Positions 19,089-63,069 of a stretch of 64,000 nucleotides of DNA are shown here, piece after piece. This DNA is from Octopus bimaculoides. Taxonomy: Eukaryota. The position numbers and the translations under genes are program-made. The notes under the pieces were generated by a model that was not told the origin of the DNA, did not search any database, and saw nothing but the letters and a program-made list of their open reading frames with translations. The stretch's first letter is position 1; each line of letters opens with the position of its first letter. The stretch is from positions 21,806,484 through 21,870,483 of the forward strand of contig NC_068993.1 of the NCBI RefSeq assembly GCF_001194135.2. Reading direction: 5' to 3'.

Positions 19089-19138
<50 letters not shown>

Positions 19139-26737: not shown

Positions 26738-26774
26738 AGACACACAAATACAAACACAAATACACAATTTTCTA

Positions 26775-26955: not shown

Positions 26956-27139
26956 AAACACACACACATGTATAAAGGCAAAATCAATAGAAGTCACAAA
27001 ACTGACAGAGTGTACTGACTAGCACCGCTTTTGTTAAATGTAAGCGTTAAACTAATTCAAACGTTTGTGGCTTTGAGTTAATTTAACCCTTACATTTAGC
27101 AAAAGTGGTGCTAGCCCTCTGACACCTTTGTGACTTATA

Positions 27140-27490: not shown

Positions 27491-28698
27491 ATACATACGT
27501 ATGTATGTATATATGTGTGTGTGTGAATGTGTATGTATCTTCTCTATTTCATCAATTATATTCTTTCTTTGAAGTTGGAGCTGGTTTCTAACAAAGATAC
27601 AAGGCTCTATCTTTGGAATGTAGATAACGTAAACAAAGTCACATTTTAAACCAGAGAAGTCTTGTATAGTTTTACTGTTCCACCTACAGATATTAGTTGT
27701 AATGTCCGAATGAGTTAGTTGATGTCTTTTTCTGAAAACCTTATCAGATCGCTTACTGGTGTTGTGTTGCTAATTTCAGCCATAATCGTGGTGGAGAAAT
27801 TCCACGTGGTATAACATATATGTTTAAAATCCAGTCTGAATAACGCTATGTTAGTAGGTAAAGGGATTTTCTCTTATTTACAATAGGAGAAATAAACTAG
27901 TTACTGATTTAAGCTGGAGGAATCGCAATAAATATAGAAGGGAACGTTAAGAAAAAGTACGTCTGATGTTGAGGGTGACATCTTGTATGTATGTGTGTAT
28001 GTATGTATGTATGTATGTATGTATGTATGTATGTATGTACGACTCTATGTATGTATATATTATGAATGTATGTATGATTGCAAATACATATACACAGCCT
28101 TGCAGGTGAGAGAAAGCTGGATTGCTATTTTTACAACTAGCTGCATACGTTTGCTTCATTTAACCTTCAAATGGAAATGTTAATTTTGCTACGAGCAACA
28201 TATATTTAAATAGCACCTGTTGCTTTCAATTTGTGTGATTAAAATAACATAATAAATGGTAATGCTGATTGCTCGTTGCCGATATACTGTATCTTAGGCA
28301 GATCAACGCAAACTGATTTAAGCTATACGTAAAAAGGAGACTCAAACTGTGTACAACATACTCAGGAAATAGTGGCCATATAAATACCACTTTCTTTTCT
28401 TTGATGAACAGCATTTCTCTTCTCAATACGCAGCATCTGTTTTGGTTGTCATTCATTATGGCAACTTGTCTACATTAAGTTATTGGCTTATGAGCGTAGA
28501 GAGACCACAGCTGCTATGCATATTGGTTAGAGCAACCAAACACCAGTCACTTAGATAATAAATTAGCATTTCACCTATTTTCAGTAAGCCGCTGTTCTCT
28601 TGTACATATAATTAATTACAGCAATTGCAGTTTGTATTCATCGTCAATAAATTGTTCTTTTTCTTTTCTTATTTTTTACAGATTAAAAGGAACCCATA

Positions 28699-28840
28699 AT
28701 GAGTGGCTTGAGTCCCTTCAGTTTGTTAATTTTTATTTTCATCTACTGTCTCACGGTATATGCTGCAACAGCTATGAGCCTGGCTCAGGCATGTATGGAA
28801 TCACCCAGTATGTGCGAAAGTATCTCGCTTTCTCATTTAA
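28699..28840 (+). CDS. FMRFamide: FMRFamide precursor, signal-peptide coding exon (47 codons + 1 nt, phase 1)
   Basis: Pyrimidine tract and CAG acceptor ending at 28681; ATG at 28699; donor GTGAGT at 28841. MSGLSPFSLLIFIFIYCLTVYAATAMSLAQACMESPSMCESISLSHL is a hydrophobic signal peptide followed by LAQACxES, resembling the squid/cuttlefish FMRFamide precursor N-terminus as I recall it. Phase matches the acceptors at 36087 and 61606. Confidence 0.9.
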
Positions 28841-28984
28841 GTGAGTATCGTTTTTTGACTTCACTCTGTTTTGCTTTTCCACAATCACAGAATTGATCAG
28901 TCAATTTACGTGTATACATACACACACGCCGCTAACACCAGCAACATTGATAATTTCTTAATTTGGGTTTGATATCTTGTTTAC

Positions 28985-29083
<99 letters not shown>

Positions 29084-29134
29084 TGTGTATACATGCATAT
29101 CTATATATAATATATATATATATATGTATGTATA

Positions 29135-30621: not shown

Positions 30622-30820
30622 TATATATACATACACACACACATACANNNNNNNNNNNNNNNNNNNNNNNNNNNNNNNNNNNNNNNNNNNNNNNNNNNNN
30701 NNNNNNNNNNNNNNNNNNNNNNNNNNNNNNNNNNNNNNNNNNNNNNNNNNNNNNNNNNNNNNNNNNNNNNNNNNNNNNNNNNNNNNNNNNNNNNNNNNNN
30801 NNNNNNNNNNNNNNNNNNNN

Positions 30821-30851
<31 letters not shown>

Positions 30852-31874
30852 GAGAGAGAGAAGGGGGAGACAGACAGGTAAACTGACAACGAGCGGTGTG
30901 TGTGTGTGTGTGTGCATTATTAAAAGGAAATTACGACCTTGACTTCGGTGCTTCACAAATATTACTTTCATTACAGAATATATTTTCTTTCAGTTCGTCT
31001 TGTGAGCAGAGTTGTTGTAAAGTAGATGTAATGCAATATTGCGTTTTGTTGCAAACAAACATGTCTTTGTGGCTGCTTTAATTTATTGTTTTGTATAAGT
31101 AAGGATTTGTAAGTATAGAAAACCGAAAAGATAAAAAAGAGAAAGCAAAGAAAAGATGGCAAAGAAAATACTGTCTAGGATGCGTCATCATCTTTGTTCA
31201 ATACAGGTAGGTAAGAGATTTTAAATTGGATTCATTTGTGGAAAGAAGTTAGGAATTAGATTTATGTTAAATTTGATACTTCCGAAGCATTTATAGAAAC
31301 AAAGAGGGTGAAATTCATATGTAAGAACAAGTATTATGTTTTGAGGTGAAAGTTCACGTACAAGCACAAGTTATCTTGAGCAAGACGGTCCATTTAAAAG
31401 TCCTGGATTTGTGAAATACAGTGGGATAGTAGTTTGTGATTCACATACATGCATACAAGCATGCGCGCATACACATAAACACATACACATATATGCATAT
31501 ATATATATACGTCTGTGTGTATCACTCCTAACGTCTGAAATGATATATGTACGTTCATTACTAAAGTTCTCGTAAGCCGTTACACGTATATCTGCATATA
31601 TACACGCAAACATGCATACATTGTCGCTCAAACTGTAGAACTCTTTTACTCATATACATATAGAGAGGCGCATAAGCTGTTATATTATTTTCTTCATAAC
31701 TTCTCTTCGGTTTCTCACCCATAGCGAAGCAGTTTTTGAAACTTGGACGATGACCATGCCGGCTATTATCTTGCGAATGAAATTGGTATGGAAGGCCTAA
31801 ACTATATAGAACACAGTCATGTGAGTGTCCGTGTGTGTATGAGCGTGTGCTATCGTTTGTGTATTTGTGTTCGT

Positions 31875-31923
<49 letters not shown>

Positions 31924-32149
31924 CCCCGACCATTTATTTTCATCGCTCAGCAAATAGCGCTGTAGAATGTTGGCATCTAGGCTATGGGAACGAAACCAAA
32001 TCTGGTTGCGATTAGGAAAACCGTAATTTAACGATGGCTGGTATGGACAAACGCTTTAGACTAATATAAATTGATAATCTTTTTACCAATGTCTCATTTA
32101 AAATGTATCGTTTGCAATATAATTTAACTACGGAGATATCTGTCAAGAA

Positions 32150-33600
32150 ATCACTTTGGCTATTGCATCTCTGATAACACTACTAAACACAAGCGATGTT
32201 CTCTTGGCGATCACTTTTATTGTAACCTTTAACTCAGTGTGTTAAAGATTTACGGGTTAAAAAATTTCTATCATTTCGCCTCGTTCTAGCTTTTCTTGAA
32301 CAGTGCAACCATAATTTTGTTGTTGCTGCTTTTATAGTTAATAGGAAATATCTCGCCTTCCAAGCAGAAATCACAGTAACATATTTATTCAATCGGATAA
32401 CGGATCCTGTTCTAATTTACTATTTATGATTCTTATAATGATCCGCTTATTCGGCGATAATTCATCCGACAACACAGATAGGTAATGATTGCTTGGATTA
32501 TGACTTCTTTATTTATCTATTTCAGAATAATTTATTCTAATAATTTTGTCATTAGAAAATAATATAATATGGTTAGTTAACGCTATTTAAATGGGCAGTC
32601 ATTATTTTCTTGTTGAGTGGATAACTCTTTACGTCGTATATCTTTTTATCAGGCCTCCCTCTTAGTATTCCTCCGTTAATGAGAATTTTTCATTCGACGA
32701 AGCTGTTAGTGTTTCTAGTTTATATACTGAACTTCCCAATGAATTTTGATGTGAATCGGTGAATGTAGAACCAGCAACGAAGCAGTGGAAAATTGTCCTT
32801 GTTCTAGAAGTCAATGTTGAGCTCTCTGCATATTTCTAATTCTTTTTTTTTTTTTGTTATCATTTAGTCGAATGTTATTTGCATGCTTACCGCTAGTTCA
32901 CACATGTCCCTGTTATATTTACCCAGTTGTTAGTTTGGATATGGAAGAAGAGCATGATCTTGATATTGATGAAATGAGAAGCGTGTTTCTTAGAAGGTGG
33001 TGACTGTAATTTAAGTACAAAATAATTCGTTTGTGCTTTCTTTATCTAGAGTTATTTCCTCTGCTTTAACCATCGAAGATAAGGTTTGATCATGACGTTT
33101 TGGATTCTCATTGAATGTGTTCTTGCTAGAACACCATCATTTCTAATATTGTCATTCGATTAGATTTTCAAGAACGACTGAATATTTTCATGCTGAAAAT
33201 GTTCGTGTTGGCGTATTTGATGTTGATAAGCTATTTATGGATCGGCAATGAGTTAAAACAAAGAACATTTTTGTTATCATTTTTTGCTGCTCAGAGACAG
33301 AAGTGTTATGAGAACCAAATTTCCCGAATAACAAGTTGTAAAAGGTTTCTCTTTATTACAATTACCAAATGGCAATTGAGAAAGCTCCGTATGAGAAGAG
33401 ATGATTTTAAGGATCAAACATTTTCCAAAATTAAAATGCTATTGAAGAAAATAACAGACTTATGATTTGTAAAGAAGAAGAGAATCGCGGACATAGGATT
33501 TTGCCTGAATTGGAGTTTCCCTAACATGTCTCCTGCAACAAAAACACATGGACGTATACAGGAGGCGTAGAACATATGTATGGCCTAAATAGTTTAACTA
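32150..33600 (-). mobile_element. Heavily decayed Penelope-like element (RT thumb + GIY-YIG remnants); duplicate at ~57790-59500
   Basis: Fragmentary minus-strand motifs: KSTNELFLYLNYSHH (KPTDxHxYLxxxSxHP-like), SISRSCS, NDCPF and CDFCLEGEIF (CxLCLxEK-like). Many stops. Confidence 0.45.
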
Positions 33601-33825
33601 AAGATTATGGTATTCGTTTTGCCACGAGGATGTAGATATTTTATGGCATCCTGTGCAAATGTCATAAAGTATAGACAGAAATTGTGAAAACTTTCTCTGG
33701 TGGTTTATAAGTAGAATTCTGACGCTACAGCTTTGACAAACATTGATTGATACACGCTGATTCTTCTTTAAAACTGACGTTATGGGCACATATGCACTAT
33801 CATAACGAATACTTATAGATGCATA

Positions 33826-33900
<75 letters not shown>

Positions 33901-34750
33901 CTTCCACTTTTTCTATCCCCAAAGGTTTATCAATGTTATCCTCTTATTTATAGATTTATATATTGTTACCAGTAGTAGACAGAGTGGATAAATCTTGTAA
34001 CATACGTATCATATATATGACAAACAGATATATTTTATTACCATCAAGACATAACATAAGATGTTGTGCGTTTGATCAATGGAATGATAATTAATTAAAT
34101 GTATATGTTGTGGAAAAATCAAAATTGTGTCCATTAATAAATTTTGAAATTCTTTATGCAATTTAATGTATGTTTTGTATTTAAACGACAACTGATTACT
34201 ATCTAAATTTGTGCTTTGTTTCCAATATGATTTAATACACACTTGTTTTTTTTTATTTCCTTATTACATCTTGAAGATTTTGGAGAATTTTGGTTCTGTA
34301 TTTCAATATTTATTGTTCTTCAATTCTCGTAGATCACTGTCGTGATAAATTTCATTGAGACACAAATTCAAAATGAAACATGATTGCGGTAGCCCATGTA
34401 CAAAGTATAATATTTAGTCCGTACTTCAAAATATCGGTGTTGCATTTATTAGAGATGCACGATGTTTTATAATTGCGATACTAGACTTACAATTATAACT
34501 ATGTACACCTTGGTGAAACGAAGAAAATGTGAAAGAATACGGAGAATAGTGGAACATTTTATGAACGCAAGCAGCTGCAGCACTGTTCTATCGTGGGGAA
34601 ACCACTGGCTCACCTATCAAATTTGGTATGTATTCAGAGTGAATAATAATAAAATAATAAATCGAAATATTAACTAAATCGATGGATAGATAAGATAGGG
34701 TCGTTGATAGGTACTATGGTCCGTGAGTACTAACATATATAGGTATATAT

Positions 34751-35200
34751 AAAATTTAATAATGAGGGTAGAAATCGATATTAATCAATCAAAAGCAGTG
34801 GCCTAGCATATTTAAAAAATCCGAAGATTAAAATTATATTACATACAAAATTAAGAGGAATGACCACCAAAAGTGGACTCCTATATGCTAGAAATAGATG
34901 CCAAATTACCTAACCTCGAAGAGTGTGTTCTCAAGAAAAAACTTTCAGCAAATCGCCAGACTGTAAAAATGAGCAATACAAATGAAAATATATGAAATGA
35001 AAAAAACGATTAACTTACGTACCAATGGTTACACAAGTAAATATCTGCAGGATCATCAGTGTAGTCTGTCTATTACAAAATATGATTTTCAGAACTAAAC
35101 ACAGAACGTTCACCCCAGAGGAAGCATGTGTAAAGTTCTGCAAATTACATTCGGTGTATTTTTTGATTAATATCAATTTCTACCCTCATTATTAAATTTT
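34751..35200. repeat. ~40-bp inverted repeat pair (34751-34794 / 35161-35200) in a copy-1-specific insertion
   Basis: AAAATTTAATAATGAGGGTAGAAATCGATATTAATCAA versus the reverse complement of TTTTGATTAATATCAATTTCTACCCTCATTATTAAATTTT. Confidence 0.85.
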
Positions 35201-35295
35201 TGAATAACGATGTTCTCAAACCGGTAAATAAGCTGCAGAAATTTATCAATTGCAGAGTTATTTCCGGCCTCAGCGCGCCAGATAGGTCGTGCTAC

Positions 35296-35338
35296 TTCAG
35301 GCTGATGACGAGCAATGACTCAGAAACATGTCCCTGAA
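35296..35338 (+). ncRNA. Minimal type I hammerhead ribozyme motif (Penelope-associated type)
   Basis: TTCAGG-CTGATGA-cGAGcaatgaCTCa-GAAAC-AT-GTC-CCTGAA: 6-bp stem I (TTCAGG/CCTGAA), intact CUGAUGA and GAAA cores, GAG/CTC stem II, palindromic ACATGT stem III and a GUC cleavage triplet. Confidence 0.75.
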
Positions 35339-36087
35339 TGCAGGCTAGGCTGGGTGGGGATGCTTGTCTCCCCCTCACAAATATAAGGACACAGAAAATG
35401 TGTAAAGGCCGATATGAAGTGGTCCAGCTTCCTAGGGCTAAATAGCGGCAGTATGATTCCCTAATAGCGACTGTAGATAGTTATATGGATGTAAGGATAG
35501 ATATATAGATAGTACGAAATAATTTCATTTAATCTCTAAGGTACATTTACTCAAGCAAAACGTACGCATTGTAATTTCAGTTATATAAATAACGTGTCAG
35601 ATTTAATCACATCAAAACCTCTAATATGAAGAAGACTTAACTTATTAGTCAATAATATATTATAATCTAAGCCTATCATTTCCAAAGGATGTATATTAGA
35701 CGAAAGTGGTATTGTAATATCTGAGCGTTGCGGGGACAAAGGTCATAGTGGAACATAGAATTGTGAAACGAATTAGTTATAGCCCCGTAAATTATGATTC
35801 CGTATTTCTTTAACGTTGTATATATGGTGTTGATAACCTCGGTATATGTAAATAGACCTTATATAGTTATGAATATAGTAGTTGTAGTAGTATTCATAGA
35901 AAAAAAAATCTGTTTGAAACATTGTGAGATAGGGCAAGTCTCTGCGATAACAGTACAATAACAATCATACTAATATTGCTAGTGAGAACAATGCCAATAG
36001 TAATGTCAGTACTAATAATGATGATGTTAATTATGATACATTAAGACAAATATTTATGCCTTTTTTTCTTTTCTTATCTCTTTGCAG

Positions 36088-36899
36088 GTTCTGAAGAAGG
36101 ATTAAAGAGCAAACGCTTTCTTCGTCCAGGAAGAGCTCTTTCTGGAGATGCTTTCTTGAGATTTGGTAAGAATGGTCTAAATTTACCATTCGAAGATAAA
36201 CGATTCCTTCGATTTGGTAGAACTGATCGTCAATTTGAAGATATGCTAAAGGAAGTTTTACAGAGAGCTGAAAACGTTGACAATAGACAAAAGAGATCCA
36301 CTGACAACATTCCTCAAAGCTCAGTTCAAGATGACAGTTCGAAAATTACGAAGAGAAATGCTGACGCCAGTGATAACGGAATGGACAAGAGGTTTATGAA
36401 ATTTGGTAAATCCGGTGATCTTCCTTACGTCAATGAGTGGAGTGACAAGCGTTTCATGAGATTCGGTCGGGAACCTGACAAGCGATTCATGCGATTTGGA
36501 AAATCTGATGATAAACGATTCATGCGCTTTGGTAGAAACCCAAATGAACTTGAAGATAGACTCGAAGAAGGAAAACGCTTTATGAGATTTGGACGGGGCA
36601 ATGAGGAAGAAGAAAAACGGTTTATGAGGTTTGGACGAGATCCTGACAGTAAGTTAATGGGTTATGGTAATAGTGAGGAAGAAAAACGCTTTATGCGCTT
36701 TGGTAGAATGTCAGACGAAGCTGATGCTCAAAAAAGGTTCATGAGATTTGGCCGAAGTGTTGATGATGACAAGGCGAACAGGTTGAAAAAATCAAACGAT
36801 CAGCTTCGTACGATAAGAATGGGACGTAGCGTTGATGATAAAAAGGTGAACAGCGCTAATGGGGATGCGTACCTAAGAATTGGACAAAGTGATGAATAA
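36088..36899 (+). CDS. FMRFamide: FMRFamide precursor peptide-coding terminal exon (copy 1)
   Basis: Strong pyrimidine tract and TTTGCAG acceptor ending at 36087, in frame with the signal exon. Encodes KR-FLRP-GR, ALSGDAFLRF-GK, KR-FLRF-GR, an RQKR furin-type site, KR-FMKF-GK and seven KR-FMRF-G(R/K) units; stop TAA at 36897-36899. Joined CDS is 954 nt, 317 aa. Confidence 0.97.
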
Positions 36900-38389
36900 G
36901 ATGTTGGTACGTTGAGCAGGCTGACGGGATCCGTCCCATCTTTGGAAATAAGAAAATCAACTTTTTTCAAAACAAATAACTGCAGTAACAACAACAAGGA
37001 GCAACATCAGCAAGAATATGAGTAGGAACAAATAGAATATCAATACAACAACAACAATACCAATCAGATTTTGTGATCATATCTTGAACGTTGTGTTTAC
37101 ATCTATCATAAAACATCTGTTGGAGAGTAACGAACTGCTTGTTTAGGAGGAAACATTTTGATTTCTATATGACCAGTTCTAATTGAAAAGAAAGAAAGAA
37201 GGACATTATAAATTCATCAACAACTCAACTCTCTTATGGTGGTAGTTGGTATATTTCTCTATATTGTACAATTTATATAAAACTGGATCGATAGATCCTC
37301 GTCGTATCCAGAAATTCAGGACTTATACCAGCCTTCAATGTAGAGCTTTCTTCAGCATGCTTCATCACTATGTGTATATATGTATATGTGTATATGTGTT
37401 TATGTATACATTTGTCGAAAACCCCACTCTATATATATACCACTGTATATTTATGTTCGTGGTTATGTATGTGCATGTATGTTATATATATATATACATA
37501 TTTATATATGTACATACTATCATATATGTGCACTAGTTTGCATACATAACCCTCTCACATATGCATCAATATGCATCACAGACAAACATATAAATATATA
37601 TACATAGAAAAGAACCACCAAATAGAGTGAGTTTGATGAAATGGTTTTATGAAAATTAAATGTAAATTTTGTGGAGAATTAAAATTTTATTATATATCCT
37701 TCACGAGATTTCAGATTTACTTATCCAACTTAATGTACGTATTCTAATTAAACAATAATTATTTGCTGCCAAATGTATTTCTTACTTCAAATGTAGTTGA
37801 ATGCTTTGTTGTTGTTATATACTGACAAAATTGCTGGTGGTAAATCTGCATATTTAAACTCTTTTTGATTCTTTTATTCCTACATATAAAATTTGCAATA
37901 GAGTTTGGTGAAACATGGCTGTAATCAGAGATCAGGTCTCCGAAAGAATTATCTGTGGGGTCAACAACTGGCATGTTTATTTATTAGGTACAAGAGCTGA
38001 TATTTGTATCTAGTATTTATACATATTTTCAGTGTGATGAACTGAGATGTACCGAAAGAGAGTAAGAAGTGTGCCAGGCTACTAACAATAGTACACAATT
38101 TTATAGGTAGACCTTGCACATGGCGACTGATCTTTCAAAAGTTTGTAGCCGATTATAACAATTATACAATTTAATTGTTGTTCAATTTATTGACACAGTA
38201 AAGATGAAAAGCAAAGTCAAATGTCACAGAAGCTGAACTCAGAGCGTGGAGGGTTATAACTAAATACCTTGTGATAGTTTGTTTGAAGTTCTGCCAACCT
38301 GCTGCCATTATATCTAAGTAGAGGAAGATGATTGTCTTACTAGAAGTACAAGAGTTTCGATACACACNNNNNNNNNNTATTTTGCCTTT

Positions 38390-48765: not shown

Positions 48766-49278
48766 CAATTATCAAGGTATGCATATACATGTATATGTGT
48801 ATATACATACATACACACACACACACATATATATATACTTGTGTGTGTGTCTGTGTGTATTTTAATAATAAAGGGTAAGAGCAATAATAATTTTACCGGG
48901 TTCCCAGCACGGAAATAGAAATCTTTTAGGCAAATTTTACAAATTATTTTATAATCATATACATAATCATAATAACGGGTCTGGTTTATGTTTCGCCACG
49001 TACCGATTAGAAATAGATGCTAAATTCTTTCTTACTACCATAAAATCTATGAGAAATAATACACTTTTAATGCAGGCAAAAGACAAATAATGAATCAACA
49101 AGGCCGATTAATTATGAACGCGTTTCGAACTTAAAGTAAAACACATTACTTACTGTTTCTATATGAGTATGCGTATATGTATATGTTTATGTATATGTGT
49201 CCATATATTTATATGTATAAATGTCTAATATATATGTAAAGATATATATATATATATGTATATATATATATCTATATA

Positions 49279-49331
<53 letters not shown>

Positions 49332-49754
49332 GTATATATATATGTACATACATATATGCGTGTGTGTGTGTGCGGATATGTGTATGTATATATTTGTGTG
49401 AGTATGGGTATTTATATATATATATACATGTTTGTGTGAGTGTGTACATATGTAGGTGTTATCATCGCAGAAGGTCTCCATATATTGTGAGAATATGATT
49501 GCATGTACTTTTTACCGTTTATAGTTTTCTTACCTATTAGAGTAGCTTCCCTTTTATTCAACAGTTTTTTTACAGCGTCTGTTGTCATAATAGCCGATGA
49601 GAATGCATATTAGCTCTTAGCTCCCGCATATGAAACACTGAGTCCTGTTATTACAACTTACTGATTGTCCTAAACTCTACATATGTAAGTTCCTCTGTTT
49701 ACTTAATATCCAAGTCTCATTCTTTTGTTGTCATTTTATTATTATATATTAGAG

Positions 49755-50013: not shown

Positions 50014-50927
50014 NNNNNNNNNNNNNNNNNNNNNNNNNNNNNNNNNNNNNNNNNNNNNNNNNNNNNNNNNNNNNNNNNNNNNNNNNNNNNNNNNNNNNNN
50101 NNNNNNNNNNNNNNNNNNNNNNNNNNNNNNNNNNNNNNNNNNNNNNNNNNNNNNNNNNNNNNNNNNNNNNNNNNNNNNNNNNNNNNNNNNNNNNNNNNNN
50201 NNNNNNNNNNNNNNNNNNNNNNNNNNNNNNNNNNNNNNNNNNNNNNNNNNNNNNNNNNNNNNNNNNNNNNNNNNNNNNNNNNNNNNNNNNNNNNNNNNNN
50301 NNNNNNNNNNNNNNNNNNNNNNNNNNNNNNNNNNNNNNNNNNNNNNNNNNNNNNNNNNNNNNNNNNNNNNNNNNNNNNNNNNNNNNNNNNNNNNNNNNNN
50401 NNNNNNNNNNNNNNNNNNNNNNNNNNNNNNNNNNNNNNNNNNNNNNNNNNNNNNNNNNNNNNNNNNNNNNNNNNNNNNNNNNNNNNNNNNNNNNNNNNNN
50501 NNNNNNNNNNNNNNNNNNNNNNNNNNNNNNNNNNNNNNNNNNNNNNNNNNNNNNNNNNNNNNNNNNNNNNNNNNNNNNNNNNNNNNNNNNNNNNNNNNNN
50601 NNNNNNNNNNNNNNNNNNNNNNNNNNNNNNNNNNNNNNNNNNNNNNNNNNNNNNNNNNNNNNNNNNNNNNNNNNNNNNNNNNNNNNNNNNNNNNNNNNNN
50701 NNNNNNNNNNNNNNNNNNNNNNNNNNNNNNNNNNNNNNNNNNNNNNNNNNNNNNNNNNNNNNNNNNNNNNNNNNNNNNNNNNNNNNNNNNNNNNNNNNNN
50801 NNNNNNNNNNNNNNNNNNNNNNNNNNNNNNNNNNNNNNNNNNNNNNNNNNNNNNNNNNNNNNNNNNNNNNNNNNNNNNNNNNNNNNNNNNNNNNNNNNNN
50901 NNNNNNNNNNNNNNNNNNNNNNGTATG

Positions 50928-53261: not shown

Positions 53262-54771
53262 NNNNNNNNNNNNNNNNNNNNNNNNNNNNNNNNNNNNNNN
53301 NNNNNNNNNNNNNNNNNNNNNNNNNNNNNNNNNNNNNNNNNNNNNNNNNNNNNNNNNNNNNNNNNNNNNNNNNNNNNNNNNNNNNNNNNNNNNNNNNNNN
53401 NNNNNNNNNNNNNNNNNNNNNNNNNNNNNNNNNNNNNNNNNNNNNNNNNNNNNNNNNNNNNNNNNNNNNNNNNNNNNNNNNNNNNNNNNNNNNNNNNNNN
53501 NNNNNNNNNNNNNNNNNNNNNNNNNNNNNNNNNNNNNNNNNNNNNNNNNNNNNNNNNNNNNNNNNNNNNNNNNNNNNNNNNNNNNNNNNNNNNNNNNNNN
53601 NNNNNNNNNNNNNNNNNNNNNNNNNNNNNNNNNNNNNNNNNNNNNNNNNNNNNNNNNNNNNNNNNNNNNNNNNNNNNNNNNNNNNNNNNNNNNNNNNNNN
53701 NNNNNNNNNNNNNNNNNNNNNNNNNNNNNNNNNNNNNNNNNNNNNNNNNNNNNNNNNNNNNNNNNNNNNNNNNNNNNNNNNNNNNNNNNNNNNNNNNNNN
53801 NNNNNNNNNNNNNNNNNNNNNNNNNNNNNNNNNNNNNNNNNNNNNNNNNNNNNNNNNNNNNNNNNNNNNNNNNNNNNNNNNNNNNNNNNNNNNNNNNNNN
53901 NNNNNNNNNNNNNNNNNNNNNNNNNNNNNNNNNNNNNNNNNNNNNNNNNNNNNNNNNNNNNNNNNNNNNNNNNNNNNNNNNNNNNNNNNNNNNNNNNNNN
54001 NNNNNNNNNNNNNNNNNNNNNNNNNNNNNNNNNNNNNNNNNNNNNNNNNNNNNNNNNNNNNNNNNNNNNNNNNNNNNNNNNNNNNNNNNNNNNNNNNNNN
54101 NNNNNNNNNNNNNNNNNNNNNNNNNNNNNNNNNNNNNNNNNNNNNNNNNNNNNACTGGTTTATCGATCCCGAAAGGATGAAAGACAATGTCGACCTCGGC
54201 GGAATTAGAACTGAGAACGTAAAGACAAACGAAATACCACTAAGCATTTCGCCCGACGTGCTAAATTTTCTGCCTCCTCGCCGCTGCCTCTTCTGATGGC
54301 ACACAAGTGTCGATGAAGGGTTGAATGACAAAATCCAAGCTTCTTTGCTATTTCATCAACAGTTACGATGGCATTTTGTTCCACCAGGTTTTGCGGGACG
54401 TACTTGTCGAGCTCTACAGATCTTCCAGGACGAGACTCGTCTTATAGGCTGTAGATTCTGGTTTGGTATTTCTGGAACCACCTTTCCCACTGACTTATGT
54501 TTATTGTCCTATCCTCATATACTGGATTAATATTGCTTGCACTTTCGTTGCGCTGTTCCTTTGTTGAACTCATAAAGCAAAATATGCCGAATATTCTCCT
54601 CTGTCACTTCCATTATAGCTTTCGCAAATATAACTGTTGAAATCGAACTGCACTCTTCAAACTTGCAATAAGGTGAAATGTCTACCTACTTTTATAGCGA
54701 GTTGGTGTAGGTAATGTATCCGGACCCCCTCTGACTTTAAATTCATGCATTATTTATGGGCTAACTCAATA

Positions 54772-55774
54772 TATATAAAGGGATACAAAAAATGGGACAA
54801 GAACGCAAAACATCCAGACAGTTTGATGGTACAAAAAAGGGACTAGATTCCTTGGAAAAAAGAGCACTAGATTCCTTGAAAGAAAGCAGCGAATGTATAC
54901 GAAAATAAGGTCGCAAAAAAAAACAGAGAAATTGTGCACAAATACAAAAGCAATAACAGGACATTAACAACAGGTGTCTTTCGACTAAAGACGATTTAAA
55001 GTGAGCTGGCGTGTGTCGAAGCGAAGCCTTAAGGCAGGGACGTAAGAGATGACAGGCATGGAGAGGAATATAGATGTTGCATGATGGAAGTCGAACCAAG
55101 AAAGAAAGGTCAGTCTTGGCCGAAGACCGGTTACGTGGAGAGAGAAGAGAGAGGTAGAGGCAGAGCGATAGAAGAATAGGGAGGGACTAGAAAAAAAGAA
55201 AAGGGACAGAGTGAAGTGAAAGAGGAGAGAAGGTGAGACTGAAGATAAAGGCAGGAAATATGAGAGAGGGGGAACAAAAGAAGGAAGAGTGGAAAGCACG
55301 AAGTAAGTGTGAAGGGGCTGATAGAAGGAAAGAAAGAAAGAATGAAAGAATAAGAGAGACGTACAAAATTTAGATATATATATATTTACTTACATATAAG
55401 AGATAATAGTGTACGTACGCCGCCGTATGTATATAAAAAGGAATTAAAAAAATGGGACAAGAGCGCAAAGTATCCAGACAGTTAAATGATACATAAAATG
55501 GACAACAAAACATCCAGAGAGATGATCCAATAAAAAAGGGACAAGAAAAACAATGACGGGTCATTCGGAGTTCCAGATTATCTTTGCAATTTCGGCTGGT
55601 TATACCCGAGATTGCTCCAATCTGGCCAACCCCAAAGAAAAACTAAGCTAAGAGCACTAGATTCCTTGGAAGAAAGCAGCGAATGTATACGAAAAAAAAG
55701 GACGGGAAAAAAACGGAGAAATGGTGGACAAAAGCAATAACAGAACAATAACAACAGGCGTCCTTCTACTATGG
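54772..55774. repeat. Unclassified insertion with ~200-bp internal direct repeats; no visible counterpart in copy 1 (equivalent position there is partly a gap)
   Basis: AAAAATGGGACAAGA...CATCCAGA...GAGCACTAGATTCCTTG(G)AAGAAAGCAGCGAATGTATACGAAAA...AACAACAGG(T/C)GTC occurs at ~54790-54985 and again at ~55450-55770. Confidence 0.6.
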
Positions 55775-58700
55775 NNNNNNNNNNNNNNNNNNNNNNNNNN
55801 NNNNNNNNNNNNNNNNNNNNNNNNNNNNNNNNNNNNNNNNNNNNNNNNNNNNNNNNNNNNNNNNNNNNNNNNNNNNNNNNNNNNNNNNNNNNNNNNNNNN
55901 NNNNNNNNNNNNNNNNNNNNNNNNNNNNNNNNNNNNNNNNNNNNNNNNNNNNNNNNNNNNNNNNNNNNNNNNNNNNNNNNNNNNNNNNNNNNNNNNNNNN
56001 NNNNNNNNNNNNNNNNNNNNNNNNNNNNNNNNNNNNNNNNNNNNNNNNNNNNNNNNNNNNNNNNNNNNNNNNNNNNNNNNNNNNNNNNNNNNNNNNNNNN
56101 NNNNNNNNNNNNNNNNNNNNNNNNNNNNNNNNNNNNNNNNNNNNNNNNNNNNNNNNNNNNNNNNNNNNNNNNNNNNNNNNNNNNNNNNNNNNNNNNNNNN
56201 NNNNNNNNNNNNNNNNNNNNNNNNNNNNNNNNNNNNNNNNNNNNNNNNNNNNNNNNNNNNNNNNNNNNNNNNNNNNNNNNNNNNNNNNNNNNNNNNNNNN
56301 NNNNNNNNNNNNNNNNNNNNNNNNNNNNNNNNNNNNNNNNNNNNNNNNNNNNNNNNNNNNNNNNNNNNNNNNNNNNNNNNNNNNNNNNNNNNNNNNNNNN
56401 NNNNNNNNNNNNNNNNNNNNNNNNNNNNNNNNNNNNNNNNNNNNNNNNNNNNNNNNNNNNNNNNNNNNNNNNNNNNNNNNNNNNNNNNNNNNNNNNNNNN
56501 NNNNNNNNNNNNNNNNNNNNNNNNNNNNNNNNNNNNNNNNNNNNNNNNNNNNNNNNNNNNNNACTGTGAGTTCGGTGTTTCACAAGTATTACTTCAATTA
56601 CAGAAAGTACTTCGTTTCAATTCAACTTGCGAGTAGAGTTGTTGCAAAGTAGATGTAGTGTAATAATGCGTTTTGCTTCAAAGAAAATATATCTTTGTTG
56701 ATACTTTAATTAGGATTTGTCAGTTTAGAAAACAAAAGATAAAAAAGCGAAAGCTAAGAAAAGATGGCAAAGAAAATACTGTCTACGATGCGTCATCATC
56801 TTTGTTCAATACAGGTAGGTAAGAGATGTTAGATTAGATTAATTTATGGAAAGAAGTTAGAAATTAGATTTATGTTAAATTTGATACATCTGAAGCATTT
56901 ATAAAAAGAAATTCATATATGAGAACAAGTATTATATTTTGAGGTGAAAGTTCACGTACAGGCACAAATTATCTTGAGCAAAGTGGTCCATTTAAAAGTC
57001 CTGGATTTGTGAAATAAAGTTCGATTCTAGCATGTGATTCACATACACGCACACAAGCACGCGCACATACATGTATAAACACACAAACACACACACATAT
57101 ATATAAATATACATGTATGTATGTATGTATGTATGTATGTATGTATGTATATATAAGTCTGTGTGTATCACTCCTAAAGTCTAAAATGATATATGTACGT
57201 TCATTACTAAAGTGCATATACAATTCTCGTAAGCCGTTACACATATATCTATATATATATACACGCAAACATGCATACATTGTCGCTCAAACTGTAGAAC
57301 ACTTTTTCTCATATATGCATAGAGAGGCGCATACGCTGTTATATGATTTTCTTCATAACTTCTTTTCGGCTTCTCTCCCATAGCGAAAAAGTTTTTAAGA
57401 CCTGGACAATGACCATGCCGGTTAATATCTCGCGAGTGAAATTGGTATGGTAGGCCTAAACTATATAGAACCCAGTCAGGTGAATGTGCGTGTGTGTATG
57501 AGCGTGTGCGATCGTTTGTGTATTTGTGTTCGTGGTGTGTGTGTGAGTGTGTATGTGTGTGTATGTGTGTGTCTGTGCGTCCCCGACCATTTATTTTCAT
57601 CACGGCAGATAGTGCTGTAGAATGTTGGCATCCAGGCTCTGGGACCAAAACCAAAACCAAAACTGGTTGCGATTACGAACACCGTAATTTAGCGATGGCT
57701 TCTATGGACAAACGCTTTAGACTAATATAAATTAATCATCATTTTACCCGAAGTCTTATCTAAGATGTACCGTTTGCAATATAATTTAACTACGGGGAGA
57801 TCTGCCAAGAAATCATTTTGGCTAGTGCATCTCTGATAACACTACTAAGCACAAGCGCCTTTCTCTTGGCGATCACTTTTGTTATCATCTTTAACTCAGT
57901 GAGTTAAAGATTTACAGGTTAAAAATTTTCTACCAGTTCTAGTTTTTCTTGAACAGTGCAATCATAATTTTGTTGTTATTGTTATTATAGTTAATATGAA
58001 ATATCTCGCCTTCCAAGCAGAAATCGCAGTAACATATTTATTCAATCGCGTAATGGATCCTGTTCTAATGTGCTATTTATGACTTTTATAACGATCCGGT
58101 TGTTCAGTGAGAATTCATCCGACAACACACATAGTAAATGATTGAGATTATGGATTCTTTATTTATCTATTTCAGAATAATTTATTCTAATATTTTTTTC
58201 TGTTAGAAAATAATATAATACGCTTAGTTAACGCTATTTAAATGGGCAGTCGTTTTTTTCTTGTTTGGGTGGATAACGCTTTTCGTCGTATTTCTTTTTT
58301 ACCCGGCCTCCCTCTCAATATTACTCGGTTTACGAGAATTTTTCATTCGACGAAGCTCTTAGCGTTTCCAGTTTCCATACAGAACTTTCCAATGAAGTTT
58401 GATATGAAACGGTGAAAGTAGAACCAGCAACAAAACAACGAAGCATTGGAAACTATCCCTGTTCTAGAAGTCATCGTCGAGCTTCCTGCATATTTCTAAT
58501 TCTTTTTGTTTTAATCATTTAGTCGAATGCTATCTGCATGCTTACCGCTAGTTCACACATGCTCCTGTTATATTTACCCAGTTGTTAGTTTGTATATGGA
58601 AGAAGAGCATGATCTTGATCTTGCTGAAATGAGAAATGTTTCTTAGAAGTCACAATAAGCGGTGACTGCAATTTAAGTACAAAAAACTTAGTTTGTGCTG

Positions 58701-60804
58701 TCGTTTCCTCTACTCTAACCACCGAAGATAAGGTTTGGTCATGACGTTTTGGATTTGCATTGAATGTGTTCTTCCTAGAACATCATTATTTCTGACATTG
58801 TCATTCGATTTGATTTTCCAAAAAGACTGAATTTTTTTATGCTGAAAATTTTCGTGTTGGTGGATTTGATAATTATAAACAATGCAGAGAGTACGAGCGC
58901 CTAGCATACAAAGCCTTTCCATTTCAGTTTCAGGTGAAAGACGGGATATGAGAAGTACTGAAATTCTGTGTCGTTGTTGGAAGACGTTTGTGATGTAATA
59001 TTAAAAAAATTAGAATATAGAAAAGCTGCTACAAAGATAGCAAAGGGAATATCGAATTTCCTTCGATTAGTTCATCATAGATAACAATTTACATAAAGCT
59101 TCCTTGGTCAAGTGGACTGAGTTCTGGATTTAATGTGCTGAATGAATCAAAAACCTGTACGCGCGAAATTTTTGGATCAGCGATGATTTAAAACAAAGAA
59201 GAGCATTTTTGTTATCCTTTTTTGCTGCTCAGAGACAGAAGTGTTTTGAGAACCAAAACTCCCGAATGAGAAGTTGTAAAAGGTTTATCTTTATCACAAT
59301 TACCAATGAACATGCTATTGAGGAAAATAACAGACATATGATTTGTAAATACGAAGAGAATCGCGGACACATGTTTTTGCCTAAATTGGTGTCATCAGCT
59401 CACGGAATTCCAGTAACTTGTCCCTACATGGACGTATACACAAGGTGTGGAATATATGTATGGCCTAGTTAATTTGCCCAACGATAATAGTATTCGTTTT
59501 GCAATGACGATGTACATATTTAATGGCTTCTTGGGTAAATTTCACAAAATATAGAAAGAAATTGTGAAAGCTTTCTCTGGTGGTTTATAAGTAGATTTCT
59601 GACGCTACAGCTTTGATACACATTGATTGATACACGCTGATTGTTCTTTAAAAATGTCGTTATGGGCACATATGCATTATCATAACGAATACTTATATAT
59701 GTATATAATTATATACATGTATGTGTACCTATTTATTTACATGTATGTATGTGTACGTTTACTTATATACAGCTTTGCACCTTCCGCTTTTTCTATCCAA
59801 AAAGGTTAATCAATGTTATCCTCTTATTTATAGATTTATATATGTATATGTGGTGTACTTCGTGCGAGATATTTCCCAAAGTTATATATATATATATNNN
59901 NNNNNNNNNNNNNNNNNNNNNNNNNNNNNNNNNNNNNNNNNNNNNNNNNNNNNNNNNNNNNNNNNNNNNNNNNNNNNNNNNNNNNNNNNNNNNNNNNNNN
60001 NNNNTATTATTACCAGTAGATTGATTGTATAAATCTTGTAACATACCTATCATATATATGACAAACAGAAATATCATTTTGCTATCAACACTCAACATAA
60101 GATATAGTGTGTTTCAACAATGATATGATGATTAATTAAATGTATATGTTGTGGAAATATTAAAATTGTGTCCATTGATAAATTTTGAAATTCTTTATGC
60201 AATTTAATGTATGTTTTGTATTTAAACAACTGATTACAATCTAAATTTGTGCTTTGTTTCCAATATGATTTAATACACACTTGTTTTTTATTTCCTTATT
60301 ACATCTTGAAGATTTTGGAGAATTTTGGTTCTGTATTTCAATATTTATTGTTCTTCAATTCACGTAGATCACTTTCGTGATAAATTTCAATGAAACACGA
60401 ATTTAAAATGAAACATGATTGCGGTAGCCCATGTACAAAGTATAATCTTTGGTCCGAACTTCAAAATATCAGTATTGTATTGATTACAGATAGATAATGT
60501 CTGATAATTGGAATACTAGACTTACAATTATAGCTGTTTACAATTGGGTGAAACGAAGCAAGAAGTGACAGGATACCGAAAATAGTCGAACATTCTGTCG
60601 TGGGGAAACCACTGGCTCACCTGTCGAATTTGCTTTGTGTTCAGAGTGAATAATAATAAAGTGATAAATCAAAATATTAACTAAATCGATGGATAGGGTA
60701 GTTGATAGGTACTTTGGTCCGTGAGCACTAATATTCATATATAAAATATAATGATAGATAGATAGGCAGAAAGAGAGGGGGAAAGAGAAAACTAACAGAC
60801 AGAC

Positions 60805-60853
<49 letters not shown>

Positions 60854-61606
60854 TAGATAGATAGATAGATAGATAGATGGTTGGAGAGATGATAGTATAA
60901 AAGAATTTCATTTTATCTCTAAGGTACATCTACTCAAACACAACGTTAGGGGTGATTTCCACACGAATTATTTTGAAGCTCCCTGTCAAAATATGAGAGG
61001 CAAACACACAGATACACAAACGCGCATACATATAGACACGCCGAAACACAAACACACGTGCACATTGTAATTCAGTTATATAAATAAAGTGTCATATTTA
61101 ATCACATCAAAGCCTGTAATCTGAAATAGGCTTAATTTATTAGTTAATAATGTATTATAACATTAAACTAAGCCTATCATTTCGAAAAGATGTCTATTAG
61201 ACGAAAGTGGTTTTGTAATATATATTAATACGTAATATCTCAGCGTTGCGGGGATAAAGGTCATAGTTGAACATAGAATTTTGAAATGACATTGTTAAAG
61301 TCCCATAAGTTATGATTCCATACTTCTTTAATGTTGTATGCCTGGTATTAATAACCTCGGTATATGTAAATAGACCTTATATAGTTATGAATATAGTAGT
61401 TGTAGTAGTATTCATAGAAAAAAAAATCTGTTTGAAACATTGTGAGATAGGGCAAGTCTCTGCGATAACAGTACAATAACAATCATACTAATATTGCTAG
61501 TGAGAACAATGCCAATAGTAATGTCAGTACTAATAATGATGATGTTAATTATGATACATTAAGACAAATATTTATGCCTGTTTTTTCTTTTCTTATCTCT
61601 TTGCAG

Positions 61607-62040
61607 TTTCTGAAGAAGGATTAAAGAGCAAACGCTTTCTTCTTCCAGAAAGAGCTCAAGATGACAGTTCGAAAATTACGAAGAGAAATGCTGACGCCAG
61701 TGATAACGGAATGGACAAGAGGTTTATGAAATTTGGTAAATCCGGTGATAAAAAGGTGAACAGGTTGAAAAAATCAAACGATCAGCTTCCTATGATAAGA
61801 ATGAGACGTAGCGTTGATGATAAAAAGGTGGACAGGTTGAAAACATCAAACGATCGGCTTCCTGTGATAACAATGGGACGTAGCGTTGGTGATAAAAAGG
61901 TGAACGGGTTGAAAACATCAAACGATCAGCTTCCTGTGATAACAATGGGACGTAGCGTTGGTGATAAAAAGGTGAAAAACGCTATAAGACAAGGCCCTAC
62001 TGGGTATCCGTACCTAAGAATTGGGCGAAGTGATGAATAA
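61607..62040 (+). CDS. Remodelled duplicate of the FMRFamide peptide exon (candidate alternative terminal exon, or second exon of a paralog)
   Basis: Intact TTTGCAG acceptor at 61606, same phase 1, open to TAA at 62038-62040: (I)SEEGLKSKRFLLPERAQDDSSKITKRNADASDNGMDKRFMKFGKSGDKKVNRLKKSNDQLPMIRMRRSVDDKKVDRLKTSNDRLPVITMGRSVGDKKVNGLKTSNDQLPVITMGRSVGDKKVKNAIRQGPTGYPYLRIGRSDE. Expression unproven. Confidence 0.7.
61747..61974 (+). repeat. 72-nt coding tandem repeat, 3 full units + 12 nt
   Basis: Units 61747-61818, 61819-61890 and 61891-61962 derive from the single unit at 36765-36836 in copy 1. Confidence 0.95.
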
Positions 62041-63069
62041 GATATTCCATCTTTGGAAATAAGAAAAACAACTTTTTTCACAGCAAATAAATGCAGTAAT
62101 AACAAGGAACAACATCAGCAAGAATTTGAGTAGGAACAAATAGAATATCAATACAACAACAACAATACCAATCAGATTTTGTGATCATATCTTGAACATT
62201 GTTTACATCTATCATAAAACATATGTTGGGGAGTAACGAACTGCTTGTTTAGGAGGAAACATTTTGATTTCTATATGACCAGTTCTAATTGAAAAGAAAG
62301 AAAGAAGGACATTATAAATTCATCAACAGCTCAACTCTCTTATGGTGGTAGTTGGTATATCTCTCTATATTGTACAATTTATAAAACTGGATCGATAGAT
62401 CCTCATCGTATCCAGAAATTCAGGACTTATACCAGCCTTCAATGTAAAGCTTTCTTCAGCATGCTTCATCACTATGTGTATATATGTATATGTGTATATG
62501 TGTTTATGTATACATTTGTCGAAAACCCCACTCTATATATATATACCACTGTATATTTATGTTCGTGGTTATGTATGTGCATGTATGTTATATATNNNNN
62601 NNNNNNNNNNNNNNNNNNNNNNNNNNNNNNNNNNNNNNNNNNNNNNNNNNNNNNNNNNNNNNNNNNNNNNNNNNNNNNNNNNNNNNNNNNNNNNNNNNNN
62701 NNNNNNNNNNNNNNNNNNNNNNNNNNNNNNNNNNNNNNNNNNNNNNNNNNNNNNNNNNNNNNNNNNNNNNNNNNNNNNNNNNNNNNNNNNNNNNNNNNNN
62801 NNNNATGAAATGGTTTTATGAAAATTAAATGTAAATTTTGTGGAGAATTAAAATTTTATTATATATCCTTCACGAGATTTCAGATTTACTTATCCAACTT
62901 AATGTACGTATTCTAATTAAACAATAATTATTTGCTGCCAAATGTATTTCTTACTTCAAATGTAGTTGAATGCTTTGTTGTTGTTATATACTGACAAAAT
63001 TGCTGGTGGTAAATCTGCATATTTAAACTCTTTTTGATTTTTTAATTCCTACATTTAAAATTCAAAATA

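What the first reader, a model, noticed from the sequence alone, without database searches (positions are those of the whole stretch)
61607..62040. Duplicated FMRFamide exon rebuilt in frame: candidate alternative terminal exon with a different peptide set
Relative to copy 1 (812 nt), the exon (434 nt) has four length changes, all multiples of three. These are -189 nt (36138-36326), -348 nt (36420-36767, removing all seven FMRFamides), +2x72 nt and +15 nt; 812-189-348+144+15=434. Four independent lengths preserving frame has roughly a 1-in-81 chance under neutrality. There are no stops, and the acceptor and phase 1 are intact. Splicing 28840 to 61607 would give a 191-aa secreted precursor. This parallels the Lymnaea FMRFamide gene, where one signal exon is spliced to mutually exclusive peptide exons in different neurons. 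Here it would have arisen independently by exon duplication (inference).
Basis: partly seen in the sequence, partly recalled or inferred. Interest (0 to 1): 0.9.

Follow-up and report, generated by a model that had tools for sequence, protein, structure and literature searches.

The report
Remodelled duplicate of octopus FMRFamide exon
The Octopus bimaculoides FMRFamide neuropeptide gene has a second, rebuilt copy of its peptide-coding last exon 25 kb downstream; the copy is still readable and spliceable, but no transcript found here uses it, and much of its apparent preservation comes from sequence copying between the two exons.

Summary
Window 61607-62040 is a 434-nt open copy of the 812-nt FMRFamide peptide exon (36088-36899). 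The length arithmetic is correct, and joining exon 1 (28840) to 61607 gives 191 aa.

It belongs to a segmental duplication of at least 7.9 kb (29986-37893 <-> 54159-63062). This covers 6.1 kb of intron, the exon and the ~1 kb 3'UTR, but no copy of the signal exon.

- The intact acceptor and phase lie in a gene-conversion tract (224 intron sites: 28 derived states shared against O. vulgaris, 0 private).
- The -348 deletion (TGAT microhomology, always in codon phase) and the 72-nt expansions are frame-preserving by construction. The odds are about 1 in 9, not 1 in 81.
- Staying free of stops has P of about 0.4-0.5.

New hints of coding selection: 19 of 20 copy-2 substitutions change an amino acid (P about 0.015-0.055), and cleavage and amidation sites are kept or gained.

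No transcript or protein in the collections joins exon 1 to this exon. An old RefSeq isoform X2 and a stand-alone 109-aa gene call use it differently.

Verdict: a partial gene duplicate kept similar by gene conversion. I put an unused relic at about 50% and a true alternative last exon at about 30%.

The parts
28682..28840 (+). Signal-peptide exon of the FMRFamide gene (ATG at 28699; 142 coding nt, ends in phase 1; donor GTGAGT at 28841). It is the only copy in the assembled window.
   Evidence: The mRNA contigs L001 and L009 align to 28679-28842. tblastn and blastn find no second copy.
36088..36899 (+). Copy 1: the parental peptide exon (coding part, 812 nt). It encodes ALSGDAFLRFG, FLRFG, FMKFG and 7 x FMRFG. 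With exon 1 it gives the 317-aa precursor XP_014775928.1.
   Evidence: It is 97% identical to O. vulgaris and O. sinensis. Pfam FARP 55.6 bits, 9 stretches.
36900..37893 (+). Copy 1 3'UTR and the end of the duplicated segment. AATAAA/ATTAAA signals lie at 37655, 37678 and 37747. Positions 37070-37886 are 97-100% conserved with O. vulgaris.
   Evidence: The mRNA contig L009 covers it to 37375.
53262..54153 (.). Assembly gap (892 N) that hides the left edge of the duplication. Sequence to its left has no collinear match to 27000-29986.
   Evidence: Homology starts at 54159 <-> 29986. A copy of exon 1 would need at least 1.29 kb here.
54159..63062 (+). Copy 2 block: a duplicate of 29986-37893 (3' 6.1 kb of the intron, the peptide exon and the 3'UTR). 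It is collinear with the parent, in the same orientation, and contains three internal gaps and one ~1.5 kb insertion.
   Evidence: Self-BLAST, global alignment with identity profile, sharp right breakpoint at 37893/63062.
61378..61749 (+). Gene-conversion tract shared with copy 1 (35860-36419, minus the 189-nt deletion). It covers the acceptor-proximal intron and the first third of the exon.
   Evidence: Intron part: 224 sites, 28 shared derived states against O. vulgaris, 0 private. Exon mid part: 92 sites, 3/0/0. Only the first 50 exon nt carry 3 private substitutions, all non-synonymous.
61607..62040 (+). Copy 2 peptide exon (434 nt, open, phase 1, stop TAA at 62038-62040). It keeps FMKFG and has lost ALSGDAFLRFG, FLRFG and all FMRFG units.
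   Evidence: Pfam FARP 13.3 bits, below the 15.5 cut-off.
61744..61976 (+). 72-nt tandem array (3.2 copies, 93% matches) derived from the C-terminal tail of copy 1. Each unit reads KK-V(N/D)(R/G)LK(K/T)SND(Q/R)LP(M/V)I(R/T)M-(G/R)R-SV(D/G)D.
   Evidence: Unit translations and 0 synonymous differences among units.
61711..62040 (+). 109-aa ATG-to-stop CDS that is on record as a called gene on GCA_001194135.2. It has no signal peptide.
   Evidence: The equivalent mechanical ORFs of copy 1 are not on record.
62041..63062 (+). Copy 2 3'UTR. It has a 30-nt deletion just after the stop, a new AATAAA at 62086, and retained signals at 62824, 62847 and 62916. Private divergence is 1.2%, against about 7% in unconverted intron.

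Best explanation
The 434-nt segment is the coding part of a 5'-truncated duplicate of the FMRFamide gene.

Shown:
- At least 7.9 kb was copied 25.5 kb downstream in the same orientation: the last 6.1 kb of the intron, the peptide exon and the whole 3'UTR. No signal exon or promoter was copied in the assembled sequence.
- The duplication is about as old as the O. bimaculoides / O. vulgaris split.
- Gene conversion has since re-homogenised collinear stretches. These include the splice acceptor and the first third of the exon.
- The coding remainder was structurally rearranged: two deletions, a 72-nt unit expanded to three copies, and +15 nt. It escaped conversion and diverged at least as fast as intron.

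Inferred:
- In today's genome the exon is most likely an orphan terminal exon that is rarely or never joined to exon 1.
- The proximal copy-1 exon has an equal or better acceptor and its own poly(A) signals, and it is transcribed first.
- The open frame is then largely a by-product of conversion, frame-neutral repeat-mediated rearrangements and moderate luck.
For: - Extent and mosaic identity of the duplication.
- Three-way site patterns with O. vulgaris. In the conversion tract at the acceptor the counts are 28 shared / 0 / 0. In unconverted intron (2208 sites) they are 138 / 153 / 109, with JC distances c1-c2 0.137, c1-Ov 0.129 and c2-Ov 0.153.
- The exon tail has 17 private copy-2 changes in 132 sites, against 0 in copy 1.
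- Frame preservation is largely built in: TGAT phase, preset 72-nt period.
- P(no stop) is 0.39-0.55.
- There is no second signal exon and no homology left of the gap.
- The 191-aa product is absent from the protein collection, and no Logan-derived protein carries the copy-2 tail. Copy-1 mRNAs were recovered from two RNA-seq runs.
- Isoform X2 is held only in an old snapshot (eukprot). Its single possible GT-AG junction uses weak sites inside the 97-nt tract where the copies differ at one base.
- A 109-aa stand-alone model exists instead of an exon-1-linked isoform.
- The residue before the amidation Gly of the parental tail unit differs between species (M in O. bimaculoides, T in O. vulgaris). 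The expanded unit is therefore not a conserved bioactive peptide.
Against: - Two free indels (-189, +15) are both in frame (about 1/9).
- 19 of 20 independent copy-2 substitutions are non-synonymous (P 0.015-0.055 under neutral simulation). This is what positive selection on a translated sequence would give.
- KK and G-R processing sites are retained in units 2 and 3, and a new G-R site is created at the C-terminus (GQ to GR).
- The 3'UTR and its poly(A) signals are as conserved in copy 2 as in O. vulgaris, though older conversion could also explain this.
- Two automated annotations include the exon in a model, which may reflect RNA coverage.
- The transcript sampling available here is thin.
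Confidence: 0.5

Rival explanations
1. True alternative last exon. In some cells exon 1 is spliced past copy 1 to 61607. This gives a 191-aa secreted precursor without FMRFamide. Under standard dibasic cleavage and Gly amidation rules it would yield FMKFamide, VDRLKTSNDRLPVITMamide, VNGLKTSNDQLPVITMamide and VKNAIRQGPTGYPYLRIamide.
For: - Open frame, phase-1 acceptor with an intact polypyrimidine tract, shared signal exon and complete 3'UTR with poly(A) signals.
- N:S of 19:1 on the copy-2 lineage.
- -189 and +15 are in frame.
- The repeat layout KK-peptide-G-R-acidic spacer is kept, and a new GR site is gained (sequence).
- The copy-2 3'UTR evolves about 6 times slower than intron.
- Gastropod precedents exist (Lymnaea, Helix, Haliotis; PMC4208409).
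Against: - No transcript or protein with this junction was found. RefSeq-type models do not make it.
- The acceptor and phase are conversion products.
- The copy-1 acceptor has the preferred G at +1 and lies 25 kb upstream with its own poly(A) sites.
- Unit 1 has lost its amidation Gly.
- Squid shows a single FMRF transcript (PMC3892160).
Confidence: 0.3
2. Separate paralogous gene. Copy 2 has its own first exon (a copy of the signal exon, or a new one) hidden in an assembly gap or in the 24-kb spacer, and is transcribed independently.
For: - The left edge of the duplication runs straight into gap 53262-54153.
- A stand-alone gene is called on copy 2 in an annotation of the v2 assembly.
- Further gaps lie at 50014-50922 and 55775-56562.
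Against: - A collinear copy of exon 1 would need at least 1.29 kb left of 54159, but the gap is sized at 892 bp and the sequence left of it is unrelated.
- No exon-1-like sequence exists anywhere else in the window.
- The stand-alone model starts at an internal ATG and has no signal peptide.
Confidence: 0.08
3. Assembly artefact. Copy 2, or its stretches that are 98-100% identical to copy 1, results from mis-assembly or from gap filling with copy-1 reads in a short-read draft.
For: - There are twelve N gaps in 64 kb.
- The 98-100% identical patches lie near contig ends.
Against: - Most of the block is only 79-90% identical to copy 1 with many private indels. That is too divergent for haplotypes or collapsed reads.
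- All rearrangement junctions lie on one gap-free contig (60005-62595).
- Private variants flank the identical tract: a G insertion at about 61580 and three exon substitutions.
Confidence: 0.04

Closest known systems
Lymnaea stagnalis / Helix aspersa / Haliotis asinina FMRFamide genes (alternative peptide exons behind one signal exon)
   Same: One 5' exon encodes the signal peptide and downstream exons encode different peptide sets. The proposed octopus product would likewise share only the signal exon with the canonical precursor (PMC4208409).
   Different: In the gastropods both mRNAs were cloned and shown to be expressed in different neurons. Here no transcript is known. The gastropod second mRNAs still encode FaRPs, mostly heptapeptides in Lymnaea and Helix. 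Copy 2 keeps only FMKFG and falls below the Pfam FARP threshold. It would be an independent, lineage-specific exon duplication.
Cephalopod FMRFamide precursors (Sepia, Loligo, Octopus vulgaris)
   Same: Copy 2 descends from this gene. Copy 1 is the orthologue: 97% identical to O. vulgaris, with 7 FMRFa, FLRFa and ALSGDAFLRFa.
   Different: Only one transcript per species has been described in cephalopods. In squid, alternative splicing was ruled out in stellate ganglion: 228 identical cDNA clones (PMC3892160).
RefSeq model XP_014775931.1, 'FMRFamide-related neuropeptides-like isoform X2' (O. bimaculoides)
   Same: It uses the copy-2 tail (KKVNRL...YLRIGRSDE) as the C-terminus of an FMRFamide-gene product, so automated annotation has already touched this exon.
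   Different: X2 is exon 1 + copy 1 up to ...FMKFGKSGD + the copy-2 tail (254 aa). It keeps the 189 nt that copy 2 lacks. Its junction must lie inside the 97-nt tract where the copies differ at one base, and the only GT-AG register there is weak. It is held only in an older snapshot. It is not the 191-aa model.
Partial (5'-truncated) tandem gene duplicates homogenised by gene conversion
   Same: The copy lacks a first exon and promoter. It shows mosaic identity, with tracts that share derived states relative to an outgroup.
   Different: Such copies usually accumulate frameshifts or stops. This one has none, and it shows a non-synonymous excess.
Calcitonin/CGRP (CALCA) type alternative terminal exons (own knowledge)
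   Same: In that system the choice between a proximal and a distal terminal exon, each with its own poly(A) site, yields different peptide hormones behind a common N-terminus.
   Different: The CALCA exons are unrelated in sequence and their regulated use is demonstrated. Here the two exons are paralogous and use is unproven.

Membership tests
FMRFamide-related peptide (FaRP) precursor, Pfam PF01581 | Multiple X-X-R-F-Gly units flanked by basic cleavage sites, scoring above the Pfam gathering threshold | tested here: not met
   The 191-aa product scores 13.3 bits against a 15.5 cut-off, with one stretch (FMKFG). The copy-1 precursor scores 55.6 bits with 9 stretches.
FMRFamide-related peptide (FaRP) precursor, Pfam PF01581 | Descent from the FMRFamide gene (homology) | tested here: met
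   Collinear duplication of intron, exon and 3'UTR.
FMRFamide-related peptide (FaRP) precursor, Pfam PF01581 | N-terminal signal peptide | tested here: inconclusive
   A signal peptide is present only if exon 1 (28699-28840) is spliced on. No private signal exon is assembled. The 109-aa stand-alone CDS has none.
Alternative peptide exons behind one signal exon (Lymnaea-type FMRFamide gene) | Splice compatibility: same donor, acceptor in the same phase, open frame to a stop, own poly(A) signal | tested here: met
Alternative peptide exons behind one signal exon (Lymnaea-type FMRFamide gene) | Existence of the second mRNA | tested here: not met
   The 191-aa product is not in the 15-billion-protein collection. 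No Logan-derived protein carries the copy-2 tail. Only copy-1 mRNAs were found. Sampling is limited and raw reads could not be searched.
Alternative peptide exons behind one signal exon (Lymnaea-type FMRFamide gene) | Mutually exclusive, cell-specific expression | not testable with these tools
   Needs in situ hybridisation or single-cell data with exon-specific probes.
Non-functional partial duplicate (pseudo-exon) | Lacks promoter and first exon | tested here: met
   No exon-1 homologue outside 28699-28839. The duplication edge lies in gap 53262-54153, which is probably too small to hold one.
Non-functional partial duplicate (pseudo-exon) | Disabling mutations (stops, frameshifts, lost splice site) | tested here: not met
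   None is present. About a third of the exon and the acceptor were recently converted from copy 1.
Non-functional partial duplicate (pseudo-exon) | Neutral substitution pattern (N:S as expected from mutation alone; rate similar to intron) | tested here: inconclusive
   The rate is at or above the intron rate: 17/132 against about 7%. N:S is 19:1 where about 15:5 is expected, P 0.015-0.055.
Interlocus gene conversion between tandem duplicates | Tracts in which the paralogues share derived states relative to an outgroup, embedded in older divergence | tested here: met
   35860-36087 gives 28/0/0 and 34141-34360 gives 14/4/1. Unconverted intron gives 138/153/109.

The most novel reading that the evidence does not exclude
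Copy 2 is a neofunctionalised alternative last exon of the octopus FMRFamide gene. After duplication it shed every FMRFamide copy and amplified a formerly inert C-terminal spacer into a tandem array of new amidated peptides (two ...LPVITM-amides and one ...PYLRI-amide, plus FMKFamide). This happened under positive selection, while gene conversion kept its splice acceptor matched to the parent. It would be the first alternatively spliced FMRFamide gene in a cephalopod, and a rare case where the birth of a new neuropeptide from spacer sequence can be traced step by step.
Probability: 0.3. Interest if true: 0.7.

Novelty: new member of a known kind. Interest (0 to 1): 0.45.

Why it matters
If the exon is used, one octopus neuropeptide gene would produce two non-overlapping peptide sets from a single signal exon, as in pond snails, but by an independent and recent exon duplication. 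The intermediate steps are still readable in the genome: the deletions, the spacer-to-peptide expansion and the gain of a cleavage site. That would make the origin of a new neuropeptide directly testable.

If it is not used, the locus is an example of how gene conversion and phase-locked repeats can keep a dead exon looking alive. This is a caution for annotation pipelines, two of which have already produced conflicting models here.

Tried and rejected
- Looked for transcripts by exact product. X2 is not on any contig on record.
- Looked for a second signal exon by tblastn and sensitive blastn. None was found.
- Tried to see whether O. vulgaris or O. sinensis have copy 2. Their loci (gene plus or minus 10 kb) hold one peptide exon only. 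The 10 kb downstream reaches only the equivalent of window ~46.9 kb, short of the copy-2 site at 54-63 kb, so the test is void.
- Tried to walk further using a conserved 32-aa ORF in the 3'UTR. It is not indexed. No called gene lies within 10 kb downstream of copy 2 to use as an anchor.
- First read the 3'UTR identity as gene conversion. Its site pattern (8/8/2) fits equally well with constraint, so this is left open.
- First inferred that the duplication clearly predates the species split. Pooled counts show a near-trichotomy with mosaic segments.
- Considered haplotype or assembly duplication and rejected it on divergence.
- Literature searches for the accession numbers and for octopus FMRFamide isoforms found nothing on this exon.

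Full report
**What is there**

The window is the FMRFamide locus of Octopus bimaculoides (GCA_001194135.2, CM046613.1). The copy-1 product is XP_014775928.1.

- The signal exon carries the ATG at 28699 and ends at 28840 in phase 1, with donor GTGAGT.
- The canonical peptide exon is 36088-36899 (812 nt). With exon 1 it gives the 317-aa precursor.
- Two RNA-seq contigs from Logan have exactly this structure: L001 (SRR16213284) and L009 (SRR32601320). Both also carry a 5'UTR exon that is not in the window.
- The flagged segment 61607-62040 is 434 nt and open in the same frame. It is preceded by an almost identical polypyrimidine tract and AG.
- Exon 1 plus this segment translates to 191 aa.
Tandem Repeats Finder finds the 72-nt unit in 3.2 copies at 61744-61976.

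**Context: a partial gene duplication**

Self-comparison shows that the exon is part of a collinear duplication, 29986-37893 <-> 54159-63062, in the same orientation.

- It holds the last 6.1 kb of the intron, the exon and the whole 3'UTR. There is a sharp right breakpoint at 37893/63062.
- Its left end runs into assembly gap 53262-54153. Sequence left of that gap is unrelated to the region upstream of 29986.
- No second copy of the signal exon exists in the assembled window.
- A collinear copy of exon 1 would need at least 1.29 kb in a gap sized at 892 bp. A private signal exon is therefore unlikely but not excluded.

**Age and gene conversion**

I fetched the orthologous loci of O. vulgaris (L003) and O. 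sinensis (L004) and made three-way alignments.

| Region | Sites | c1 = c2, differs from Ov | copy-2 private | copy-1 private |
|---|---|---|---|---|
| Unconverted intron (pooled) | 2208 | 138 | 153 | 109 |
| Intron just upstream of acceptor (35860-36087) | 224 | 28 | 0 | 0 |
| Middle exon part (36327-36419) | 92 | 3 | 0 | 0 |
| Intron patch 34141-34360 | 214 | 14 | 4 | 1 |
| 3'UTR 37070-37886 | 660 | 8 | 8 | 2 |

- In unconverted intron the JC distances are c1-c2 0.137, c1-Ov 0.129 and c2-Ov 0.153. The duplication is therefore about as old as the species split. Some segments have copy 2 as the outgroup and others have the two copies together.
- The tract at the acceptor shows post-speciation gene conversion. 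The 'intact acceptor and phase 1' is thus a conversion product and says nothing about selection.
- The 3'UTR (37070-37886) is 97-100% conserved in all three sequences. Copy 2 is about 6 times slower there than in intron. Either constraint or an older conversion would explain this, and I could not separate them.

**The frame argument**

- All 11 TGAT motifs of the copy-1 exon lie in one codon phase, and every pair of them is in frame. The -348 deletion joins GGTGAT| to GATGAT|, so it had to be in frame.
- The 72-nt period is set by a 24-nt direct repeat already present in copy 1 (36756 and 36828). The two extra units are not independent tests either.
- That leaves -189 and +15, about 1 in 9 rather than 1 in 81.
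- Non-coding indels between the copies are multiples of three in 16 of 48 cases. Large indels are as dense in the intron as in the exon.
- With 20-28 substitutions, simulation from the inferred ancestral sequence leaves the frame free of stops 27-55% of the time.

**A new signal in favour of translation**

Outside the converted part, copy 2 has diverged at or above the intron rate. The exon tail has 17 private changes in 132 sites, against 0 in copy 1.

- Among the three units there are no synonymous differences at all.
- Counting independent events on the copy-2 lineage gives 19 non-synonymous to 1 synonymous. Neutral simulation gives so few synonymous changes with P 0.015-0.055.
- KK sites before each unit are kept. 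G-R is kept in units 2 and 3 and lost in unit 1. The last peptide gains a G-R site (GQ to GR).
- Under standard processing rules (inference) the 191-aa product would yield FMKFamide, two ...LPVITMamides and ...PYLRIamide.
- Against this, the parental tail unit is not a conserved peptide. It reads ...RTIRMGR in O. bimaculoides and ...RTIRTGR in O. vulgaris, and it is absent in Argonauta.

**Expression evidence**

- The 191-aa product is not in the 15-billion-protein collection.
- A homology search with it found only three clusters. None is a transcript-derived protein with the copy-2 tail.
- The one hit with that tail is RefSeq XP_014775931.1, 'isoform X2' (254 aa). It is exon 1 + copy 1 up to FMKFGKSGD + the copy-2 tail.
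- The X2 junction must lie within the 97-nt tract where the two copies differ at one base. The only GT-AG register there has a weak donor (GTTTAT after 36391) and an acceptor with no pyrimidine tract. I read X2 as a chimeric or ab initio model (inference).
- X2 is held only in an older snapshot, and X1 is now named without an isoform label.
- A stand-alone 109-aa CDS (61711-62040, no signal peptide) is on record as a called gene on the v2 assembly. The equivalent mechanical ORFs of copy 1 are not on record.
- Raw reads could not be searched, so expression remains untested rather than excluded.

**Other species**

O. vulgaris and O. sinensis have one peptide exon in the stretch I could fetch. 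The 10 kb downstream ends at the equivalent of window ~46.9 kb, short of the copy-2 site. Presence or absence of copy 2 there is unknown.

**Comparison with what is known**

- In Lymnaea, Helix and Haliotis one signal exon is spliced to alternative peptide exons (PMC4208409).
- In cephalopods a single transcript is described. In squid stellate ganglion alternative splicing was ruled out (PMC3892160).
- The copy-2 product fails the Pfam FARP threshold, 13.3 against 15.5 bits.

**Verdict**

Origin by duplication and maintenance by gene conversion are shown. Use as an alternative last exon is possible but unproven. My estimates are:

- about 0.5 for an unused or marginally used relic,
- about 0.3 for a true alternative last exon,
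- about 0.08 for a separate paralogue with a hidden first exon,
- about 0.04 for an assembly artefact.

Noticed in passing
window 37070-37886 (and copy 62178-63055): The ~0.8 kb distal 3'UTR of the FMRFamide gene is 97-100% identical between O. bimaculoides and O. vulgaris/O. sinensis, while introns are 85-90% identical. This is an unusually constrained UTR that may carry regulatory elements.
   Followed up: partly
L005 and L006 (Argonauta hians BAAFZT010000020.1, 45.06 Mb and 35.72 Mb, opposite orientation): Two loci encode the same 281-aa FMRFamide precursor and are 98-99% identical over the whole 21.6 kb fetched. This is either a recent large segmental duplication or an assembly duplicate.
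   Followed up: partly
L001 1-94 and L009 1-63, versus the window: The FMRFamide mRNA has an upstream 5'UTR exon that matches nothing in the 64-kb window. The promoter therefore lies more than 28 kb upstream of the signal exon, or in a gap.
   Followed up: no
window 62086: A C-to-A change private to copy 2 turns AATAAC into a canonical AATAAA 46 nt after the copy-2 stop codon. A 30-nt deletion lies directly after the stop.
   Followed up: no
window 29900-30116, 26768-26958, 24796-25001, 54159-54284: A dispersed ~200-nt repeat (…ATCGACCCCGAAAGGATGAAAGACAA…GACCTCGGCGGAATT…, SINE-like) sits at the first assembled bases of the copy-2 block, right after the gap.
   Followed up: no
window 54777-56567: The copy-2 intron has ~1.5 kb of extra sequence relative to copy 1. 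It contains direct repeats at 54860-54987 and 55650-55771 and a 788-N gap, and may be a transposon insertion.
   Followed up: no
window 36643-36666: Inside the functional copy-1 exon, one unit reads SKLMGYG where KRFMRFG is expected. This is a decayed FMRFamide repeat within the expressed precursor.
   Followed up: no
window 34141-34360 (and 60185-60384): This intronic patch is 98-99% identical between the two copies and about 93% conserved with O. vulgaris, above the intron average. It is a second conversion tract or a conserved intronic element.
   Followed up: partly
window 10198-10335, 19089-19394, 49160-49454: Arrays of a ~130-nt satellite-like repeat occur in both orientations and have many matches in the O. 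vulgaris locus as well.
   Followed up: no
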